DNA of 48,620 nt from Octopus bimaculoides (lineage: Eukaryota): positions 6,132,017-6,180,636 of the forward strand of contig NC_068990.1 of assembly GCF_001194135.2 (NCBI RefSeq). Direction: 5' to 3'. The first letter of the stretch is position 1. Every line of letters starts with the position of its first letter. The translations under genes and the position numbers were made by a program. The notes under the pieces are model-generated. The model did not search any database and had not been told where the DNA came from. It saw only the letters and a program-made list of their open reading frames with translations. Of this stretch, positions 1,287 to 46,450 are shown in pieces.

Positions 1287-1964
1287 ATGCTATTCGTTGT
1301 AGGCTTATTTTCGATGGAGCAAAATATCAAAAGAAATTCNNNNNNNNNNNNNNNNNNNNNNNNNNNNNNNNNNNNNNNNNNNNNNNNNNNNNNNNNNNNN
1401 NNNNNNNNNNNNNNNNNNNNNNNNNNNNNNNNNNNNNNNNNNNNNNNNNNNNNNNNNNNNNNNNNNNNNNNNNNNNNNNNNNNNNNNNNNNNNNNNNNNN
1501 NNNNNNNNNNNNNNNNNNNNNNNNNNNNNTGTGTGTGTGTGTGTGTGTGTTGCTTTTTTTTATTATTTTGGAAACTTAAGGTTTGAAGTGATGGTAGAAA
1601 TTGAAAGCTTCTCAGAAAATACACTTCTTTTTACACATCCATCCCTACTTTTTACCAAATTTCTTTTAACTAAAAATATGGAGAGGAATTGATAATCAAA
1701 GAAAGGGTGAAATTCTTTCCTCCTCCACGAGAATTTTAAAAAATTGCTATGGTTAAAAATCGATTTTCCTGCTTCTAATTGCTAATCGATAAGCTTACAG
1801 AAGCTATTGAAGATATGGAGATAAATATTGAAGATATGAATATTTGCTGTCGCTGTTGCTTTGTAGTTGATGAGGAGGAGGCGGAGGAGGAGGAGGAGGA
1901 GGAGGAGGAGGTAATTGCTGCTGTTGTTGATGCTGCTGCTGTTGCTGTTGTCGCTGCTTGCGGT

Positions 1965-6165: not shown

Positions 6166-7657
6166 TATATATNNNNNNNNNNNNNNNNNNNNNNNNNNNN
6201 NNNNNNNNNNNNNNNNNNNNNNNNNNNNNNNNNNNNNNNNNNNNNNNNNNNNNNNNNNNNNNNNNNNNNNNNNNNNNNNNNNNNNNNNNNNNNNNNNNNN
6301 NNNNNNNNNNNNNNNNNNNNNNNNNNNNNNNNNNNNNNNNNNNNNNNNNNNNNNNNNNNNNNNNNNNNNNNNNNNNNNNNNNNNNNNNNNNNNNNNNNNN
6401 NNNNNNNNNNNNNNNNNNNNNNNNNNNNNNNNNNNNNNNNNNNNNNNNNNNNNNNNNNNNNNNNNNNNNNNNNNNNNNNNNNNNNNNNNNNNNNNNNNNN
6501 NNNNNNNNNNNNNNNNNNNNNNNNNNNNNNNNNNNNNNNNNNNNNNNNNNNNNNNNNNNNNNNNNNNNNNNTATATATATATATATACGCACACACACGC
6601 GCACACTCACACACATATGTATATACCCTTTATACCCTTTATACATACATATATATATATATGTATCCTTTATATATGCATATGTACATATGTGTGTGTG
6701 TGTGTGTGTATAAAAATATATGTGTGTGTATATTAAAACACACGTTATCACACGCACACATCATCATCATCATCATCACCGTCTTCATCATCATCATCAT
6801 CATCATCAAATGTGAAAGGAACAAATAGAATAAAAGGGGGTAAATTTATCCATTGTTCAGTTAATTTTTATTTATCTTTAAGGTGACATGTTTTTTGGCC
6901 CCTTATCACTGGAAATATGGTTGATTAATTGCGTTCCTGAAATTTTGAAACCAATGAACTTAATTTAATTTCCATCGATTAAATATGATATTTATTGAAT
7001 ATTCTCTCATGTCGTCTTGCCTTTTACTTTTTTCTTTTTTCTTTTTTTTTTTTTTTTCCTGATCTTGTTTCAGTTGTATTTACGCGTTTTTTAGGTTTTT
7101 TTTTTTTTTTTGCTTCATTCGTTTGGTATTTTGCGAAATTTTATTTATTACGCTTCATGTAATATTTATATATTTTATATTTTTTAATCTGGTATCTTCT
7201 TTGTTTTACTTGTTTGTTCGTTTGTTTGTTTGTTTGTTTGTTTGGAGTATTGTGAAAAGCATATTTTGAAAATGTTAGATATTACGTTACTGTGGATATT
7301 ATTGTTGTTGTTGTTGTTGTTGTTGTTGTTATTTTAGGTTGTTTCTTAAAACTTTTCAAGTTCTTTCGTCTTTCGGTTGCAATTTGGAGATAAAAAAAAA
7401 GGTAGATATAGAGAGAGAAAGATTAAGAAATTACGAGAGGAAAGACCGAGAGAAGAAGACAGTAAGATTGAGAAAGATAAAGGCGAGAAGAGGAAGAGAG
7501 ACAGAAGACGAAAGAAAGGAAGCGATAAGGAAGGAGAGAGCAGAGGAGATAAACTGAGAGAAAAGAGAGAGAAGGGAAAGAGAGAGAGACAGCTGAATGG
7601 TTCTGATAAATAAAAAACAGACATTAACAGTGTTGTTTGGTCTTGTAATTGATGGAA

Positions 7658-18800: not shown

Positions 18801-20094
18801 TAACCGAAAAGAAATTATATTGAAGTCCAGCAGGGCAAAATTAAGACTGCCGGGAAACTGAGTGAAGATCTGCACCAGCAACAATGCTAATTAAATTCGA
18901 AAAACATCTTACTATTTAACTTTTCACAGCAATCAAACATATTGAACCAACACATTCTTCCGTTGTTGTTTTTGGCCTTCGGGAAGGGAATGCTGCATGG
19001 TCGAAATAGGTCCTCCCCGAGATTGGTCATATCGATAATATTTAATGTTTCCTTTTGGAAAATACCAATTTGAATGTTGCGTGGAAAATGTGTGCAAGGG
19101 AGAAAATACCGGTGAGAAGCAGGATTCTGTGGGAGACAGAATAAGTGCAATTACAAGCTCACAGTCTTTGAGTTATGATCTGTTAGAGAAAGTTGTGTTC
19201 TGGGGCAGTGTACGTAATTCAATAGGTCTGCGGTGGCGAACCATTTTTAATGTGAAAAAATCGAAATTTAATTTCTTTAGTAACACTGTGTAACATTTTT
19301 TTCTTATCTTTGGTTAGCAAGTGTTATTTCCCATTTGCTTTTACCTAGAAATCAAAGGAAATTACTTTTGTAACCTAGGCATCAATGTTTTGAAACTGAC
19401 CTATTTTCCATTACATTTCAGACAGATCCCGATGATGCAGAAATATCGTTATAGCAAATATTCTGCTCAATACCACAGATTTGCTTGTTATTTACTTGAC
19501 CTTAACCACTGGAGCCCCATAGTAGCTGACACTATGTGCATCTCTGAGCAGGAATAGTTTGACAATACATGCATCATGAGCAGGAATAGTTGGAGAGCAT
19601 CATAGCCATGTGTTGAGATGTATTCTTTGGAGTTTGAATAAATGTAACAAAAGTAGTTTGAAGGAAATATCGGCTAATTTTCATACTTTCCTGTGAAAGC
19701 AAATAGGAAATAACAGTTGCTACCCAAGGACAAAAGTCGTGTTACACAGTGTGATCCTGTTATTGATGGTATAATCTAAATTTGTGCAATTTCATATACA
19801 TTCATTGACACCAATTAGCTTCATGTATACGCACATATCAATGCATAATACTGCACTTACAGATCATCGAACTCTAGAAACAGCTGTAAAGGATTACCCA
19901 TATTCACTGCTCTGTAATCAGTGAGGCTAGAATATAAACTCTCCGGATTCCTACATGTGTATGAAGAACCACAATGAAGAACTGCTTGGATTCTCCCCGT
20001 TCTATTCTCTTTTATCTGTGATTTTAGAGTATGAACCTACCTATGAAAAACTACTCTGAACTTTCGCTTTTATGGTTTTTCTATTTTCTGCTTT

Positions 20095-21419
20095 CAGTCC
20101 GCGACAGCATCGAGGGTACTTTTGAATTTTTCCCACCGAGTAATCATTTCCCAGGCCCTAAACACCCCGGAAAGCGATGGAGCTCGCCGCGTAGTTTATA
20201 TCCTGATATTTTTTCTCTCTGTAAGGGATTTTTAAAAGAAAAGAAGAAAGGAAGTAAAAACTACCGCCTAAAGGAACACGTTTCGCTTATGCATGACAAT
20301 TATGTCAAGCGAATGATGAAAGTAAAGGAAGAGAAGAGTCAGAAGATCGTTTATATGGATGAAAGCTACATCCACAAGAACGATTGTCGGCATGAGGATT
20401 CATCCTACGATCCAAATGATGAACAAGATCTTACAACTATTGCATGCCACAAAGGACAACGATATTGTTTCATTGCTGCAATTATAGATGCCGATCATAG
20501 TATTCCGGACGGTCAACGATCGAATGAACAACAATCTGGATTACTGATGGATACGCTTGATCTCTTTGAAAAGGAAAAGAAGCAAACGAAGGATTATCAT
20601 GGCATGTTTAATCCCGAATACTTTGTCAAATGGGTGAGACAGTTATTGCAGTCTTTGAAAGGGGAGAACATATCCAATGTTGGTATCGTGATGGACAATG
20701 CCAAGTATCATAAAAAGCTACCCGAAAATACGCCGATAAAGAAAGCAACATTACAAAAAGCGGGTACAAAATATGGAACTGATTTTGATGGCAATGACAC
20801 GAAGGCTAAGTTATGGGGTAAACTGCTTCTGTGTACCCAAGGTAATGTAATTCTTGTTATTGCAAGAATGGCTCAAGATGAAGGACAGGAAGTACTATTT
20901 TCACCACCTCATCACTCGGATTAGCAACCAACTGAGACTGTCTGGGATGTTGTAAAAGGAGAGATTGGTAGGCAGTACACATCCGGCACTAGATTCATAG
21001 ATGTACTTCAATTTTTGAAAGGGGCTTTTAATCATCTGAAAGCAAATATTGTTTCAAGGATGCACCGATAAAGAAAATAGGAATCTGGGAAGCCTATGAG
21101 AACACATCACGTCTATGGATGAAAATGGATTATGAAAAAAGAGATGATTCAGATGAGAATATGGGTCTTAGTGGCTCTGATGCCGAGGAAAGCATTACTG
21201 AGGACTCTGATAATGATGATTAAAAATAAACCCGTATTTTCTTTTCATTAACCTTATTTTTCTAGCAAATGGTAAAATATTGTATCAATTCAAGATCATA
21301 CCTTTGCCAGAATTGCGCTATCAATAATTCCTCGGTTTTAGGCGTATCATGCAGCAACAGAGGTTGTGTTGAAGTTTTTTAACAAGTATCATTAATACCC
21401 ACGAAGCTGTCGCAGACTG
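20095..21419 (+). mobile_element. IS630/Tc1/mariner-superfamily transposon with long D-E spacer (Sailor/DD82E-like), 1325 bp
   Basis: 24-bp TIRs 20095-20118 (CAGTCCGCGACAGCATCGAGGGTA) and 21396-21419 match 21/24 and enclose the transposase pseudogene. Confidence 0.88.
20226..21223 (+). pseudogene. DDE transposase pseudogene (DD79E as it stands); N-terminal DNA-binding region absent
   Basis: VYMDESYIH, QRYCFIAAI, DYHGMF, IVMDNAKYH, FSPPHHSD*QPTETVWDVVKGEIGRQY. TAG at 20922-20924, two later frameshifts, acidic tail ending TAA 21221-21223. Confidence 0.9.
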
Positions 21420-21644
21420 TTAATTATATGTATAATCACTTCTGTGTATAACATTTTTTCTAAATGCTTTGATGTCATTAACAACCGCCTTTACAACTTG
21501 TATATTTATATCGGTTAAATTAGTGAGGAAGGCAAACAATTAGTCAAGGCGGGACTACGGCATTTAAATTCATTTAATCTATATATATATATATATATAT
21601 ATGATACTATATATTTTGTAAAATTTGTTTTATAAAAGTATATA

Positions 21645-21679
<35 letters not shown>

Positions 21680-21985
21680 NNNNNNNNNNNNNNNNNNNNN
21701 NNNNNNNNNNNNNNNNNNNNNNNNNNNNNNNNNNNNNNNNNNNNNNNNNNNNNNNNNNNNNNNNNNNNNNNNNNNNNNNNNNNNNNNNNNNNNNNNNNNN
21801 NNNNNNNNNNNNNNNNNNNNNNNNNNNNNNNNNNNNNNNNNNNNNNNNNNNNNNNNNNNNNNNNNNNNNNNNNNNNNNNNNNNNNNNNNNNNNNNNNNNN
21901 NNNNNNNNNNNNNNNNNNNNNNNNNNNNNNNNNNNNNNNNNNNNNNNNNNNNNNNNNNNNNNTATATATATATATATATATATAT

Positions 21986-25747: not shown

Positions 25748-26075
25748 NNNNNNNNNNNNNNNNNNNNNNNNNNNNNNNNNNNNNNNNNNNNNNNNNNNNN
25801 NNNNNNNNNNNNNNNNNNNNNNNNNNNNNNNNNNNNNNNNNNNNNNNNNNNNNNNNNNNNNNNNNNNNNNNNNNNNNNNNNNNNNNNNNNNNNNNNNNNN
25901 NNNNNNNNNNNNNNNNNNNNNNNNNNNNNNNNNNNNNNNNNNNNNNNNNNNNNNNNNNNNNNNNNNNNNNNNNNNNNNNNNNNNNNNNNNNNNNNNNNNN
26001 NNNNNNNNNNNNNNNNNNNNNNNNTATATATATATATATATATAAAATCATCCAGCATTCTGACTACCTAATTAT
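24434..26075. mobile_element. Foldback (near-palindromic) element, arms ~700 bp, loop ~8 nt at ~25144-25151
   Basis: Arms match as reverse complements from the centre (GGGAAAGTATTTCTCAATT/AATTGAGAAACACTTTCCC) to the outer ends (AGGTAGTCAGAATGTTGGATGATT vs AATCATCCAGCATTCTGACTACCT). The right arm contains the 25748-26024 gap. Confidence 0.9.
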
Positions 26076-27059: not shown

Positions 27060-27590
27060 NNNNNNNNNNNNNNNNNNNNNNNNNNNNNNNNNNNNNNNNN
27101 NNNNNNNNNNNNNNNNNNNNNNNNNNNNNNNNNNNNNNNNNNNNNNNNNNNNNNNNNNNNNNNNNNNNNNNNNNNNNNNNNNNNNNNNNNNNNNNNNNNN
27201 NNNNNNNNNNNNNNNNNNNNNNNNNNNNNNNNNNNNNNNNNNNNNNNNNNNNNNNNNNNNNNNNNNNNNNNNNNNNNNNNNNNNNNNNNNNNNNNNNNNN
27301 NNNNNNNNNNNNNNNNNNNNNNNNNNNNNNNNNNNNNNNNNNNNNNNNNNNNNNNNNNNNNNNNNNNNNNNNNNNNNNNGTGTGTGTGTGTGTGTGTGTG
27401 TGTGTGTGATAGTATTTATTTATGTCCTCCACACCACTGCTTGGTAACTAGTGTTGGCTTGTTTACGTTTCTGTAACTTAGTGATTTCGGCAAAAGAAAC
27501 TGATAGAGCAAGTATCAGACTTTAAAAAGTACCTTTAAAGGTGATGCCCCAATACGGCCGCAGTCTAATGACTGAAAGAAGTAAAAGATA
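26862..27590 (+). mobile_element. SINE family A; its internal (TG)n spans an assembly gap
   Basis: Head TTAAGAAGCTTGCTT..GGTACCTTGGGCAAGTG; tail GGCCGCAGTCTAATGACTGAAAGAAGTAAAAGA. Confidence 0.85.
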
Positions 27591-35120: not shown

Positions 35121-36350
35121 TCATTTATAAGGACATACTCCCGTATTTGTCTTAGAGTTGGGTCTTTTGNNNNNNNNNNNNNNNNNNNNNNNNNNNNNNN
35201 NNNNNNNNNNNNNNNNNNNNNNNNNNNNNNNNNNNNNNNNNNNNNNNNNNNNNNNNNNNNNNNNNNNNNNNNNNNNNNNNNNNNNNNNNNNNNNNNNNNN
35301 NNNNNNNNNNNNNNNNNNNNNNNNNNNNNNNNNNNNNNNNNNNNNNNNNNNNNNNNNNNNNNNNNNNNNNNNNNNNNNNNNNNNNNNNNNNNNNNNNNNN
35401 NNNNNNNNNNNNNNNNNNNNNNNNNNNNNNNNNNNNNNNNNNNNNNNNNNNNNNNNNNNNNNNNNNNNNNNNNNNNNNNNNNNNNNNNNNNNNNNNNNNN
35501 NNNNNNNNNNNNNNNNNNNNNNNNNNNNNNNNNNNNNNNNNNNNNNNNNNNNNNNNNNNNNNNNNNNNNNNNNNNNNNNNNNNNNNNNNNNNNNNNNNNN
35601 NNNNNNNNNNNNNNNNNNNNNNNNNNNNNNNNNNNNNNNNNNNNNNNNNNNNNNNNNNNNNNNNNNNNNNNNNNNNNNNNNNNNNNNNNNNNNNNNNNNN
35701 NNNNNNNNNNNNNNNNNNNNNNNNNNNNNNNNNNNNNNNNNNNNNNNNNNNNNNNNNNNNNNNNNNNCCATGGGCTGTGGCCTCTACAAACATCACTCCT
35801 TGATATCTGTCGGTTTTATACCACGTGTTTGCCTTGTTGGCTTTGTCACAAATTCTTTGTATCCTATTCCATTCTTTGTTTCTATATCTAGGGCAGGTAC
35901 CACTGGTATCATTACTTATAATCTTATCTAACCTCTTTCTAGCTCCCCTGTATACTCGAACCCTATCTTTCTTATCATATCCAGAGAACTGCATGCGGTG
36001 CATGAAGTTCTGTATATGTTTTTTCGTTTCATAGGGTTCGCATCGTGGGGAGATGTTGTTCATTATCCTAACTAAGTCTGCTATCAGTATGTTAATTTTC
36101 ATGCTGTGTGACAAAGCTGAGTTCTTGTGAACAACATGTTTTGAAGCTTTGGGTTTCATATAATACGAGTGGAGGAGCTGCACTCTATTGCTCACAGTCT
36201 CTAACCAAAGTTCAGTATCAAGTGCCGGGAGCCTATTGTTGGGGTGTTTAGTCGGGTAATCTATAGTTACCTTGATACTTTGGTGGATGGAGTTAGCTAT
36301 TTGCTGGATGCTCTCCATTACGTTCCTTTTTGTTTCTACATGACTGTCAC
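35121..36350 (-). mobile_element. Penelope-like element RT thumb/linker fragment (interrupted by N gap)
   Basis: Stop-free from ~36350 to the gap: TIDYPTKH..LPALD..LHSYYMKPKASKHVVHKNSAL..K..IL...LVRI..N.S..FMHRMQFSGY..R..CPRYRNKEW..WY..YQGVMFVEAT. Post-gap peptide KRPNSKTNTGVCPYK. Confidence 0.85.
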
Positions 36351-36354
36351 CAGA

Positions 36355-36402
36355 GTTGGTCCTAACTATGATATTAATGTTGGTCCTAACTATGACATTA
36401 AT
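36355..36402. repeat. 24-bp tandem duplication
   Basis: GTTGGTCCTAACTATGA(T/C)ATTAAT x2. Confidence 0.9.
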
Positions 36403-36519
36403 ACCCGCCACCCTAATTCTAATAGAACATTAGGAGAAACAAACAATTATCAGAGAGAAATTTATTCATTTTAAAAAACATATAACTTATTTACTTTGAT
36501 AATTTTTTATCCATTTATT

Positions 36520-39628: not shown

Positions 39629-40086
39629 NNNNNNNNNNNNNNNNNNNNNNNNNNNNNNNNNNNNNNNNNNNNNNNNNNNNNNNNNNNNNNNNNNNNNNNN
39701 NNNNNNNNNNNNNNNNNNNNNNNNNNNNNNNNNNNNNNNNNNNNNNNNNNNNNNNNNNNNNNNNNNNNNNNNNNNNNNNNNNNNNNNNNNNNNNNNNNNN
39801 NNNNNNNNNNNNNNNNNNNNNNNNNNNNNNNNNNNNNNNNNNNNNNNNNNNNNNNNNNNNNNNNNNNNNNNNNNNNNNNNNNNNNNNNNNNNNNNNNNNN
39901 NNNNNNNNNNNNNNNNNNNNNNNNNNNNNNNNNNNNNNNNNNNNNNNNNNNNNNNNNNNNNNNNNNNNNNNNNNNNNNNNNNNNNNNNNNNNNNNNNNNN
40001 NNNNNNNNNNNNNNNNNNNNNNNNNNNNNNNNNNNNNNNNNNNNNNNNNNNNNNNNNNNNNNNNNNNNNNNNNNNNNNNNNNNNNN

Positions 40087-44970: not shown

Positions 44971-45975
44971 TTATATATGTATATATGTATATATATGTGT
45001 GTGTGTTTGTACATATATATGTATATATAGATATGTGTGTGTGTGTTTATTGGAGCCCTCTCTGCTCTCTTTTCGTAGGGTTTCTTCTCTTGTTGGGGTT
45101 GCTTTTGTTGTTGGGGTTGCTTCTGTTGTTGTGGTGTGGGTAGTGCATTCCTTCTGTTTTAGTTGTGGGCAGAAGGCTTTCAGATGGTTATTCTGTCCGC
45201 ATTGATAACATCTTGGCCTTCTGCCCTCAAATGTGACGTTCAGCATAGCGCCTTCTGGAAGGTTGAGTTGGTCAGGAATTTGTTCCAAAACGTTTTGGTT
45301 TATTTGGACTATTATTTGCAATTCTTGACCAGTCCAGTTGTTTTTTGCTTGTTTCTCGACAAGGATGATTCTGATTTTATCTTCTGAGTCGAGGAGGACG
45401 GTTGCGACAATCCAGCAAGCGTTCATTTCTGTTGGTATCTCCAGTATTTTCATCTTGGCGACGCGCCGTCCCAAGTATGTTGGAACTAGGACAAGTTCAC
45501 TGTTTCTCAGCTGGGTTGTTGGGTGCTGTTTTGCTACGTCTTCTGTAGCAAATCTGACTTCAATTGTGCCATATTTCTTACCCCTCGACAGATATGTTAC
45601 GTCTTTCCAAATGGGTTGCAAGCATTTTTCAACTGCTTGTTTTGTGTCAGTTTCTGAACGTCTACTTTTTAAAGATATATTTTTGTACACTATGGTACGT
45701 TTGTTTGTATTGTGTATAATATCTGAAGGTGTGTTTATCGAAACGCATCTTTCGCTTTTTCTTTTTAACATGTTTCTGTAATCTTTGAGAGATTCTACAG
45801 AAACGTTAATGAATTCATTTCTAGGCCTTGTCATGAAAACAAAACCTTGGCTGTTTAATGCATTGGGTTGTTGTTGTTGTTGTTGTTGTTGTTGTTGAGT
45901 GTTCAATGTGTTAGTGTTAGTGGGGGTAGTGGGAGGGCTTGGATTCAGAGATGATGCGACGCTAGCAGCGTCCAT
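44971..45975 (-). CDS. L1/Tx1-type ORF1 (gag-like nucleic-acid-binding protein with CCHC zinc knuckle), ~310 uninterrupted codons before running into a microsatellite
   Basis: From ATG 45975 (MDAASVASS..): polyQ, RRM-like GTIEVRFATEDVA..PTYLGRR..VKI-type segment, VTFEGRRPRCYQCGQNNHLKAFC (CX2CX4HX4C) and a Thr-rich tail. The ORF-track extension upstream through the N gap is artefactual. Confidence 0.82.
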   Translation of the reverse strand: MDAASVASSLNPSPPTTPTNTNTLNTQQQQQQQQQQPNALNSQGFVFMTRPRNEFINVSVESLKDYRNMLKRKSERCVSINTPSDIIHNTNKRTIVYKNISLKSRRSETDTKQAVEKCLQPIWKDVTYLSRGKKYGTIEVRFATEDVAKQHPTTQLRNSELVLVPTYLGRRVAKMKILEIPTEMNACWIVATVLLDSEDKIRIILVEKQAKNNWTGQELQIIVQINQNVLEQIPDQLNLPEGAMLNVTFEGRRPRCYQCGQNNHLKAFCPQLKQKECTTHTTTTEATPTTKATPTREETLRKESREGSNKHTHTYLYIHIYVQTHTHIYTYIHI

Positions 45976-46450
45976 TAGCTGAATTTCCTTGCTCTTTTCC
46001 TCTTCTTTCTCGCGTTTCTTTTCTTTTTTTTTCCTTTTGTTGCTCAGCGTTGCACGTGCTAGCAATACTTTGGTCGTCCCTCTCTCTCTGTCTTTTAAGG
46101 CGCAGAGAGGGCGGAGACAATTAATTTTTAAACTTTTTTGGCTGTTTTCCGACAGCAGAAGAGGGGGAGTCAACAAGAAAGGAAGAGTTGACGCCCTTTT
46201 CCAAGGACNNNNNNNNNNNNNNNNNNNNNNNNNNNNNNNNNNNNNNNNNNNNNNNNNNNNNNNNNNNNNNNNNNNNNNNNNNNNNNNNNNNNNNNNNNNN
46301 NNNNNNNNNNNNNNNNNNNNNNNNNNNNNNNNNNNNNNNNNNNNNNNNNNNNNNNNNNNNNNNNNNNNNNNNNNNNNNNNNNNNNNNNNNNNNNNNNNNN
46401 NNNNNNNNNNNNNNNNNNNNNNNNNNNNNNNNNNNNNNNNNNNNNNNNNN

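What the first reader, a model, noticed from the sequence alone, without database searches (positions are those of the whole stretch)
20095..21419. Sailor-like DD79E transposon with possible non-TA target duplication
I count 79 residues between the second D (MDNAKYH) and the E (QPTE), far above Tc1 (34) and near the DD82E Sailor group. The motifs (DESYIH, KGQRYCFIAAI, DYHGMF, PPHHSDLQPIE-like, GRQY) resemble, from memory, those of oomycete/protist-type members, which raises a horizontal-transfer question. Both TIRs survive, but the flanks are TT rather than TA. Transposase similarity begins abruptly at ~20226 after a pyrimidine tract, with the N-terminal HTH missing. The long catalytic region has only one stop, so inactivation was relatively recent.
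Basis: partly seen in the sequence, partly recalled or inferred. Interest (0 to 1): 0.7.

Follow-up and report, generated by a model that had tools for sequence, protein, structure and literature searches.

The report
Dead, truncated Sailor (DD82E) transposon copy
This is a broken, internally deleted copy of a known kind of cut-and-paste DNA transposon (Sailor/DD82E), ordinary in itself, but it belongs to a branch otherwise named only from oomycetes, a diatom and choanoflagellates, and that branch inserts at T-N-A sites rather than TA.

Summary
Window 20095-21419 is a 1,325-bp element with 24-nt terminal inverted repeats (21/24 matching). It carries a Tc1-like DDE_3 transposase remnant with 79 residues between the second D and the E.

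- **Family:** it is a Sailor (DD82E) element. Twelve of 15 intact relatives have exactly 82 residues (the other three 81-83). The 79 comes from a private 3-codon deletion.
- **Branch:** it clusters with Phytophthora sequences from the Sailor paper's own dataset (49-51% identity). Published mollusc Sailors are 25-32% identical. The closest relatives (55-68%) are unnamed environmental contigs, and one (58%) is a diatom-transcriptome protein.
- **Host:** probably an octopod, on one TE-like hit. The Sailor paper lists no cephalopod.
- **Horizontal transfer:** can be neither shown nor excluded.
- **"TT" duplication:** an offset reading. In related elements, 40 of 42 distinct flanks read Y-T-N-A next to CAG. 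This implies a 3-bp TNA duplication, as in Tc4. The window has TTT/TTA, which is TTA with one substitution.
- **Age:** not recent. The copy has lost the N-terminal ~190-230 residues. It carries two stops and two frameshifts, and it differs at 14% of family-invariant positions.

Verdict: a decayed new member of a known family; low to moderate interest.

The parts
20092..20094 (+). 5' copy of the target-site duplication, TTT (inferred TTA with an A>T change at 20094), preceded by C (Y at position -4)
   Evidence: Sequence. The family rule Y-T-N-A|CAG holds at 40/42 distinct flanks.
20095..20118 (+). 5' terminal inverted repeat, CAGTCCGCGACAGCATCGAGGGTA
   Evidence: Nearly the same TIR occurs in L001, L010 and the JAAUXU01 contigs L003, L005-L008.
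20119..20210 (+). 5' subterminal, non-coding remnant. It ends in the pyrimidine tract where the internal deletion junction lies (about 20205-20211).
   Evidence: It aligns with the subterminal region of the JAAUXU01 elements (TAAACACCCCGGAA...). No transposase similarity lies upstream of 20211.
20211..21056 (+). Transposase remnant in the frame of 20097, matching residues 89-372 of P0001 at 62% identity. Landmarks: D1 at 20358-20360, D2 at 20694-20696, E at 20934-20936. Defects: in-frame TAG at 20922-20924 and a 9-bp deletion between 20735 and 20736.
21058..21123 (+). Transposase remnant after a frameshift (GCTDKENRNLGSL*EHITSMDE), with an in-frame TGA at 21097-21099
   Evidence: tblastn with P0013; coordinates.
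21119..21223 (+). Acidic C-terminal tail in a third frame after a second frameshift (homologous part from about 21143), ending at TAA 21221-21223
21224..21395 (+). 3' untranslated/subterminal region, with a block at 21310-21343 (GAATTGCGCT...CCTCGGTTTTAGG) conserved in L001 and L017
   Evidence: Alignment A3.
21396..21419 (-). 3' terminal inverted repeat (reverse complement CAGTCTGCGACAGCTTCGTGGGTA), 21/24 to the 5' TIR. Beyond position 24 it is more decayed than the 5' TIR.
21420..21422 (+). 3' copy of the target-site duplication, TTA, followed by A (R at position +4)
   Evidence: Sequence; family rule.

Best explanation
The feature is a dead, internally deleted (non-autonomous) copy of a Sailor/DD82E cut-and-paste DNA transposon of the IS630-Tc1-mariner group.

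Inferred from the family: an intact element of this lineage is about 1.8-2.15 kb. It encodes a ~470-540 aa transposase with an N-terminal DNA-binding region and a DDE catalytic domain, in which two insertions stretch the D-E spacer to 82 residues. The transposase would bind the ~24-32 bp TIRs, which share the conserved blocks CGACA and ATCGAGG. It would then excise the element and reinsert it.

Shown from flanks of relatives: insertion is at Y-TNA-R sites, and the flanks are consistent with duplication of the central TNA.

The window copy inserted at C-TTA-A. It then decayed:
- it lost ~0.6-0.8 kb holding the start codon and the N-terminal ~190-230 residues;
- it lost three codons between D2 and E, which gives the 79 spacing;
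- it gained two stop codons and two frameshifts;
- it accumulated point substitutions, including one in the 5' copy of the duplication (TTA>TTT).

It cannot make transposase. At most it could be moved in trans if the genome still holds an intact relative.
For: - Pfam DDE_3 at E=3.2e-10.
- 71 homologues down to E=1.8e-109.
- In alignment A1, 12 of 15 intact relatives have D-82-E and three have 81 or 83. The window has a 3-residue gap, NTP---IKK.
- The nearest named reference sequences are Ch-Physoj and Ch-Phytub from the Sailor paper's Data S2, at 49-51% identity. The split from the animal/bacterial Sailor references has 100% NJ bootstrap.
- The TIR's first bases after CA are GTCCG, a start the paper lists for several Sailors.
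- The TIR and ~95 nt of subterminal DNA are shared with elements in JAAUXU01 contigs, and the TIR with L001 and L010.
- Intact relatives measure 1,836-2,143 bp between TIRs, against 1,325 bp here.
- Damage is mapped.
- Target rule: 40 of 42 distinct flanks are T-N-A, and position -4 is C or T in 40/40. The background T.A frequency is 0.066, giving a binomial P~4e-45.
- Pairs TAA/TAA (L014, Aphanomyces astaci), TTA/TTA (L007) and TAA/TAA (L010) are perfect.
- Chance TIR-like hits in bacterial genomes lack both a transposase and this flank pattern.
Against: - No other copy from the host genome could be examined. The age, the original TSD and the consensus are therefore inferred from relatives in other organisms.
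- My tree has no Tc1/mariner/pogo outgroup. Monophyly with Sailor rests on the paper's own inclusion of the Phytophthora sequences.
- Three of eight end pairs disagree in the middle base of TNA (L009, L011, L013). For L009 and L011, chimeric short-read contigs are a likely cause, since flank shuffling is directly visible in L083-L099. L013 comes from a 48.9-kb Aphanomyces contig and is unexplained.
- Sequence alone cannot separate 'TNA duplicated' from 'N duplicated, with A/T belonging to the element'. Both give the same filled and empty sites.
- The Sailor paper reports TATA, not TNA.
Confidence: 0.85

Rival explanations
1. The element entered the mollusc lineage by recent horizontal transfer from an oomycete or another protist. 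Under this reading, its protist-type sequence is the signature of that transfer.
For: - All named relatives in a 5.8-billion-protein search are oomycetes, Salpingoeca rosetta and EukProt protists. There is no named animal.
- A 58%-identical protein sits in the Stephanopyxis turris (diatom) MMETSP transcriptome.
- Published mollusc Sailors lie on the other main branch.
- The Sailor paper lists no cephalopod.
- The family is known for a patchy distribution (PMC8533490).
Against: - Identity to named protist sequences is only 45-58%, too low for a recent transfer between sampled taxa.
- The copy is old and decayed.
- Transposons are usually masked before animal genomes are annotated, so their absence from named animal proteins says little.
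- The closest relatives (55-68%; same TIR in L001, L010 and JAAUXU01) come from unidentified organisms, which may be animals.
Confidence: 0.15
2. The element really made a 2-bp TT duplication, that is, a non-canonical non-TA integration by a TA-targeting transposase.
For: - The two bases on each side of the TIRs are TT.
- Under a strict TA model, both flanks would need the same A>T change, which is unlikely.
Against: - In relatives, the base next to CAG is A in 41/42 distinct flanks and the base three away is T in 41/42. The lineage therefore does not use a 2-bp site at all.
- The window's 3' flank, TTA followed by A, fits the rule exactly.
- The 5' flank, C-TTT, needs one substitution to fit.
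- The two 'TT' are different positions of the triplet: (T)TT| versus |TT(A).
Confidence: 0.1
3. It is an ordinary Tc1/mariner or pogo element whose long D-E spacer is an artefact of decay or of an insertion in this one copy.
For: - Pfam sees only the generic DDE_3 domain.
- The only PDB sequence match of the family profile is the Sleeping Beauty catalytic domain, at E=0.29.
Against: - The long spacer is present in every intact relative, at 81-83 residues.
- The closest named references are in the Sailor dataset.
- The motifs around D, D and E differ from the Tc1 motifs quoted in PMC8533490.
Confidence: 0.03

Closest known systems
Sailor (DD82E) superfamily of IS630-Tc1-mariner transposons (Shi et al. 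2021, PMC8533490), specifically the Phytophthora sojae and P. tubulina members of its dataset
   Same: - DDE triad with an ~82-residue D-E spacer.
- The same motifs (DESYIH, RxCFIAAI, DYHGMF, MDNAKYHK, PPHxSDLQPIE).
- Short TIRs whose bases 3-7 are GTCCG/GTGCG, as in several listed Sailors.
- Two conserved TIR blocks.
- Element size near 2 kb when intact.
   Different: - The window copy has 79, not 82, through a private deletion, and it lacks the N-terminal region.
- The flanks of this branch are Y-TNA-R, not the TATA reported for the superfamily.
- The branch is distinct from the animal/bacterial branch that holds all published mollusc Sailors (25-32% identity).
- The paper's tables list no cephalopod host.
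Tc4 of Caenorhabditis elegans and relatives (TcMar-Tc4)
   Same: It inserts at an interrupted palindrome and duplicates only the central TNA: C|TNA|G for Tc4 (PMC11071193) and Y-TNA-R here.
   Different: Tc4 transposases are DDD, with a different catalytic-domain lineage. This element has DDE with the Sailor spacer. Only the target resembles Tc4; it is not a member.
Tc1 / Sleeping Beauty type elements (DD34E)
   Same: TIRs begin CAGT. It has a DDE_3 catalytic domain. A cut-and-paste mechanism is presumed.
   Different: The D-E spacer is 34 there against 79-82 here. They duplicate TA against TNA here. Sequence similarity is barely detectable (SB100X at E=0.29).
PIF/Harbinger
   Same: A 3-bp TNA/TWA target-site duplication.
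   Different: The transposase family is unrelated. Pfam gives DDE_3 here, and there is no second Myb-like gene. The TIRs are of the Tc1 type.

Membership tests
Sailor (DD82E) | DDE triad with a long D-E spacer (DD78E-DD111E, mostly 82) | tested here: met
   The window has 79. Of 15 intact relatives, 12 have 82 and three have 81 or 83.
Sailor (DD82E) | DDE domain clusters with Sailor reference sequences | tested here: met
   49-51% identity to Ch-Physoj and Ch-Phytub from the paper's Data S2, and NJ clustering with them and other oomycete sequences. Caveat: there was no Tc1/mariner/pogo outgroup in my tree, so monophyly of Sailor as a whole was not re-tested.
Sailor (DD82E) | Short TIRs with two conserved motifs, with 'GT' after the first two bases | tested here: met
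   The 24-nt TIRs read CA-GTCCG..., with CGACA and ATCGAGG conserved across the window, L001, L009-L011, L018 and JAAUXU01. GTCCG/GTGCG starts are listed in the paper's Table S3.
Sailor (DD82E) | TATA target-site duplication (as published) | tested here: not met
   The window has TTT/TTA. Relatives of this branch show T-N-A at 40/42 distinct flanks. The published TATA may combine a TA duplication with the first two TIR bases. I could not re-examine the animal branch.
Sailor (DD82E) | N-terminal DNA-binding domain in the transposase | tested here: not met
   It is deleted in the window copy, where similarity starts at residue ~89 of the N-truncated P0001, or ~169 of the 491-aa P0013. Relatives keep a conserved N-terminal region. 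Pfam gives no HTH call for it.
Tc1/mariner (DD34-41E/D) | D-E/D spacer of 34-41 residues and a TA duplication | tested here: not met
   The spacer is 79-83 and the flanks are TNA.
Tc4 (TcMar-Tc4) | DDD catalytic triad with a CTNAG target | tested here: not met
   The third catalytic residue is E (QPTE, or QPIE in relatives). Only the TNA target is similar.
PIF/Harbinger | Harbinger-type DDE transposase (plus a Myb-like partner gene) | tested here: not met
   Pfam hits DDE_3 only.

The most novel reading that the evidence does not exclude
The stramenopile/choanoflagellate-type branch of Sailor integrates at Y-TNA-R and duplicates TNA. This is a target rule not reported for Sailor, which is published as TATA, and otherwise known in the Tc1/mariner group only for Tc4. 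The branch also occurs in a cephalopod genome, which would be a cross-kingdom, marine-biased distribution that vertical descent cannot easily explain.
Probability: 0.45. Interest if true: 0.45.

Novelty: new member of a known kind. Interest (0 to 1): 0.3.

Why it matters
The copy itself is a routine fossil transposon. Three things give it modest value.

1. It corrects the "DD79E" and "TT duplication" readings, so they are not carried forward as new signatures.
2. It places a (probable) cephalopod on the host list of Sailor, and in a branch so far named only from oomycetes, a diatom transcriptome and choanoflagellates. That is relevant to the debated horizontal spread of this family.
3. The flanks of 42 independent ends indicate that this branch uses a Tc4-like Y-TNA-R target rather than the published TATA. 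If that holds, it refines how Sailor elements should be annotated (TSD-aware boundary calling). It would also show that target choice has shifted within one transposase family.

Tried and rejected
- **Other copies in the window:** self-BLAST of 19000-21679 against the window and a TIR search with 3 mismatches found no other copy and no paralogous empty site.
- **Bacterial and archaeal genomes:** a TIR pattern scan gave 64 hits. None has a transposase by tblastn, and the dozen I inspected (the lower-GC and short-contig loci) have unrelated flanks. I treat them as chance matches and used them only as a negative control.
- **Metagenome scan:** two of its seven hits (L002, L004) are GC-rich chance matches.
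- **Accession look-ups:** a literature search for GCA_003358065, PJEL01, JAAUXU01, SRR12463107 and ERZ2944887 found nothing, so the organisms behind the closest relatives remain unknown.
- **Prior reports of TNA:** searches for a TNA duplication in Sailor-like elements, or for the RepeatMasker class 'Sagan', gave nothing usable.
- **Solved structures:** a profile search against PDB sequences gave only SB100X at E=0.29.
- **Alternative end models:** I considered a 2-bp TSD with TIRs starting ACAG, TA plus an optional extra base, and a blunt insertion into T|A with element-borne N. I rejected them. N varies among copies with identical TIRs, and the required TAA...TTA pairs are not seen.
- **Upstream match:** a weak match of 20152-20202 to the ARRVVYM motif (E=0.74) is chance. 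That stretch aligns with non-coding subterminal DNA of the JAAUXU01 elements.
- **Ends not found:** TIRs could not be located in L012 (5' end cut), L015, L016 or L017 (degenerate).

Full report
**1. What is in the sequence**

Window 20095-21419 (+ strand) is bounded by inverted repeats. The 5' repeat is CAGTCCGCGACAGCATCGAGGGTA (20095-20118). The reverse complement of 21396-21419 is CAGTCTGCGACAGCTTCGTGGGTA, which matches at 21 of 24 positions. A degenerate pattern with up to 3 mismatches finds only these two sites in the 48.6-kb window, against none in 100 shuffles.

The frame opening at 20097 reads through a Tc1-like catalytic domain. Pfam DDE_3 matches at E=3.2e-10, 40.5 bits against a cut-off of 28.6.

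| Feature | Codon | Coordinates | Motif |
|---|---|---|---|
| D1 | GAT | 20358-20360 | YMDESY |
| D2 | GAC | 20694-20696 | VMDNAKYH |
| E | GAG | 20934-20936 | QPTE |
| In-frame stop | TAG | 20922-20924 | PPHHSD*QPTE |

The spacings are 111 and 79 residues, with the TAG counted as one residue.

**2. Which family**

A search of about 5.8 billion proteins returned 71 homologues, the best at E=1.8e-109 and 63% identity. I aligned the window with 16 long homologues (alignment A1). Twelve of the 15 intact ones have exactly 82 residues between the second D and the E. One has 81 and two have 83. A fourth sequence, P0004, also measures 81 but has E in place of the second D. The window shows a 3-residue gap (NTP---IKK) where every close relative has residues. 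DD79E is thus a private 9-bp deletion in a DD82E lineage.

DD82E defines the Sailor superfamily (Shi et al. 2021, PMC8533490), which spans DD78E to DD111E and is reported from 17 molluscs among 256 species. That paper's own DDE alignment (Data S2) contains Phytophthora sojae and P. tubulina sequences with the same motifs as the window: DESYIHH, RRxCFIAAI, DYHGMF, MDNAKYHK and PPHYSDLQPIE.

I transcribed 11 reference DDE domains from the supplement and added 12 homologues. In an NJ tree with 200 bootstraps:
- the window pairs with P0001 (98%);
- it sits in a 100% clade of unnamed environmental sequences;
- this clade lies next to the oomycete groups;
- it is separated by a 100% split from the branch holding bacterial, annelid, arthropod, nematode and all four mollusc references.

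Identity of the window to each group is shown below.

| Compared with | Identity in the DDE domain |
|---|---|
| Phytophthora references | 49-51% |
| Haliotis, Mercenaria, Limnoperna, Bathymodiolus | 25-32% |

The tree has no Tc1, mariner or pogo outgroup, so I did not re-test the monophyly of Sailor. A family profile against PDB sequences finds only the Sleeping Beauty catalytic domain, at E=0.29.

**3. Who carries the relatives**

A profile search with A1 gave 132 proteins at E<=1e-20. The named ones are all Aphanomyces, Achlya, Phytophthora, Nothophytophthora, Salpingoeca rosetta or EukProt protists. One 90% cluster (P0017) includes a protein from the Stephanopyxis turris (diatom) MMETSP transcriptome. 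That protein is 58% identical to the window remnant over 284 residues.

The closest sequences are 55-68% identical in the DDE domain. They come from short contigs of unidentified origin:
- Logan SRR12463107;
- GCA_003358065.1 (PJEL01);
- GCA_977009615.1;
- ENA and TARA Oceans assemblies.

Literature searches for these accessions found nothing.

The host of the window is not given. A TE-like ORF at 35772-36411 (-) has its best named hit in Octopus bimaculoides, at 67% identity. The AT-rich, microsatellite-rich, gap-ridden sequence fits a draft cephalopod assembly. This is suggestive only. The Sailor paper's supplements contain no Octopus or Cephalopoda entry.

No named animal protein was found. 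That is weak evidence, because transposons are usually masked before animal genomes are annotated. Horizontal transfer can therefore be neither shown nor excluded. Identities of 45-58% to named protists rule out a recent transfer between sampled taxa.

**4. The ends and the target site**

A scan of metagenome contigs with the TIR pattern gave five JAAUXU01 contigs carrying CAGTGCGCGACAGCATCGAGGGTACTTTTG. Two of them hold MITE-like elements of 543 and 592 bp. Their first ~95 nt align with window 20095-20205.

Contigs for eight relatives gave further complete elements, 1,836-2,143 bp between TIRs. Two proteins that occur on many contigs gave 17 more loci.

Reading every end inward toward CAG and removing duplicates leaves 42 distinct flanks.
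- Forty are T-N-A: TAA 15, TTA 14, TCA 8, TGA 3.
- Position -4 is C or T in all 40 flanks long enough to score.
- The background T.A frequency in these loci is 0.066, giving a binomial P of about 4e-45.
- The two exceptions are the window's 5' flank (TTT) and one end in L006.

The middle base varies among copies that have identical TIRs, so it comes from the target. Perfect pairs occur in L014 (Aphanomyces astaci, TAA/TAA, inside the palindrome ACCAAAC-TAA-GTTTGGT), in L007 (TTA/TTA) and in L010 (TAA/TAA).

Pairs that disagree in the middle base come mostly from short-read metagenome contigs. There, the same flanks are visibly recombined between contigs, and even swapped end-for-end: the L096 3' flank is the reverse complement of the L097 5' flank. 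L013 (TTA/TAA, from a 48.9-kb Aphanomyces contig) remains unexplained.

TIR-like chance hits in bacterial genomes have no transposase, and the dozen I inspected do not show this flank pattern.

The simplest reading is insertion at Y-TNA-R with a TNA duplication. This is the behaviour known for Tc4, C|TNA|G (PMC11071193). The window copy then sits at C-TTA-A with one A>T change at 20094.

The Sailor paper reports TATA. Its table lists the four bases before 'GT', such as TATA, TACA, TATT and TAAA. That could be TA plus the first two TIR bases. I could not re-examine the animal branch.

Sequence alone cannot separate 'TNA duplicated' from 'N duplicated, with A/T belonging to the element'. Both predict identical filled and empty sites.

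**5. State of the copy**

Similarity to intact transposases begins at 20211, at residue 89 of the N-truncated P0001 and residue 169 of the 491-aa P0013. It begins directly after non-coding subterminal DNA. The start codon and the N-terminal ~190-230 residues are gone, roughly 0.6-0.8 kb. The paper calls this region the DNA-binding region.

The damage, in order along the element, is:
1. the 5' internal deletion;
2. a 9-bp deletion at 20735/20736;
3. the TAG at 20922-20924;
4. a frameshift at about 21057;
5. a TGA at 21097-21099;
6. a second frameshift before the acidic tail, which ends at TAA 21221-21223.

The window differs at 8 of 57 alignment columns that are invariant in 15 homologues (14%). 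Intact sequences tested the same way differ at 0-7%. One of the eight columns lies in the non-homologous 5' part. The changes include L>stop and I>T in the QPIE motif. The two TIRs differ at 3 of 24 positions, and the 3' TIR has decayed further beyond position 24. 'Recent inactivation' is not supported.

**6. Mechanism**

- Shown: the anatomy, the family, the damage, and the flank rule in relatives.
- Inferred from established knowledge of Tc1/mariner-type DDE transposases: TIR binding by the N-terminal domain, excision, and staggered integration followed by gap repair that creates the duplication.

The copy is non-autonomous and coding-dead. Both TIRs and a conserved 3' subterminal block (21310-21343, shared with L001 and L017) survive. 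Trans-mobilisation would be conceivable only if an intact relative exists in the host, and that was not testable.

**7. Verdict**

This is a new, decayed member of a known family. The 'DD79E' signature and the 'TT' duplication are not real novelties. Two points are worth recording. The copy belongs to the stramenopile/choanoflagellate-type branch, not the published mollusc branch, and that branch shows a Y-TNA-R flank rule. Interest is low to moderate.

Noticed in passing
window 35772-36411 (-), abutting the N gap at 35170-35767: A TE-like ORF with no Pfam domain. Its best named homologue is the uncharacterized protein LOC128248506 of Octopus bimaculoides (67% identity over 61% of the query). 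This is the only clue to the host.
   Followed up: partly
window 44971-46208 (-), next to the N gap at 46209-46450: A long ORF with a poly-Q run and a CCHC zinc-knuckle-like motif (CYQCGQNNHLKAFC), probably a retroelement Gag remnant. It has no Pfam hit at E<=0.01.
   Followed up: partly
window 1340-1529, 6173-6571, 21680-21962, 25748-26024, 27060-27379, 35170-35767, 39629-40086, 46209-46450: Eight assembly gaps, most bordered by microsatellites ((TA)n, (CA)n or (GA)n; for example (TA)n at 21577-21679, 160 bp downstream of the element). Repeat-induced breaks of a short-read draft assembly are the likely cause.
   Followed up: no
window 21310-21343; L001 about 1523-1556; L017 about 1523-1556: A conserved non-coding block (GAATTGCGCT...CTCGGTTTTGG) in the 3' subterminal region, shared by the window copy and two relatives that are only ~62-72% identical in protein. 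It may be an internal transposase-binding or regulatory site.
   Followed up: partly
L006 11821-12412 and L007 2637-3179 (JAAUXU01 contigs): MITE-like derivatives of 592 and 543 bp with the same TIR and subterminal sequence as the window element but no transposase. The family has therefore spawned short non-autonomous elements in another, unidentified organism.
   Followed up: partly
L014 997-1006 and 2843-2852 (Aphanomyces astaci MZMZ02001351.1): The element sits in a perfect interrupted palindrome, ACCAAAC-TAA-GTTTGGT. The 5' flank of a second insertion (L013) is similar (ACCAACC-TTA), which hints at a longer preferred target or at insertion into a repeated sequence.
   Followed up: no
L083-L092 and L093-L099: Metagenome contigs that carry an identical transposon combine the same flanking sequences in different pairings, and even at opposite ends. 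TSD pairs from such contigs are unreliable; only single flanks should be used.
   Followed up: yes
P0171 (EukProt EP00591, Stephanopyxis turris MMETSP0794): A transcribed relative in a marine diatom transcriptome, 58% identical to the window remnant, with YMDKSY in place of YMDESY. It could be diatom-encoded or come from a contaminant in the culture.
   Followed up: partly
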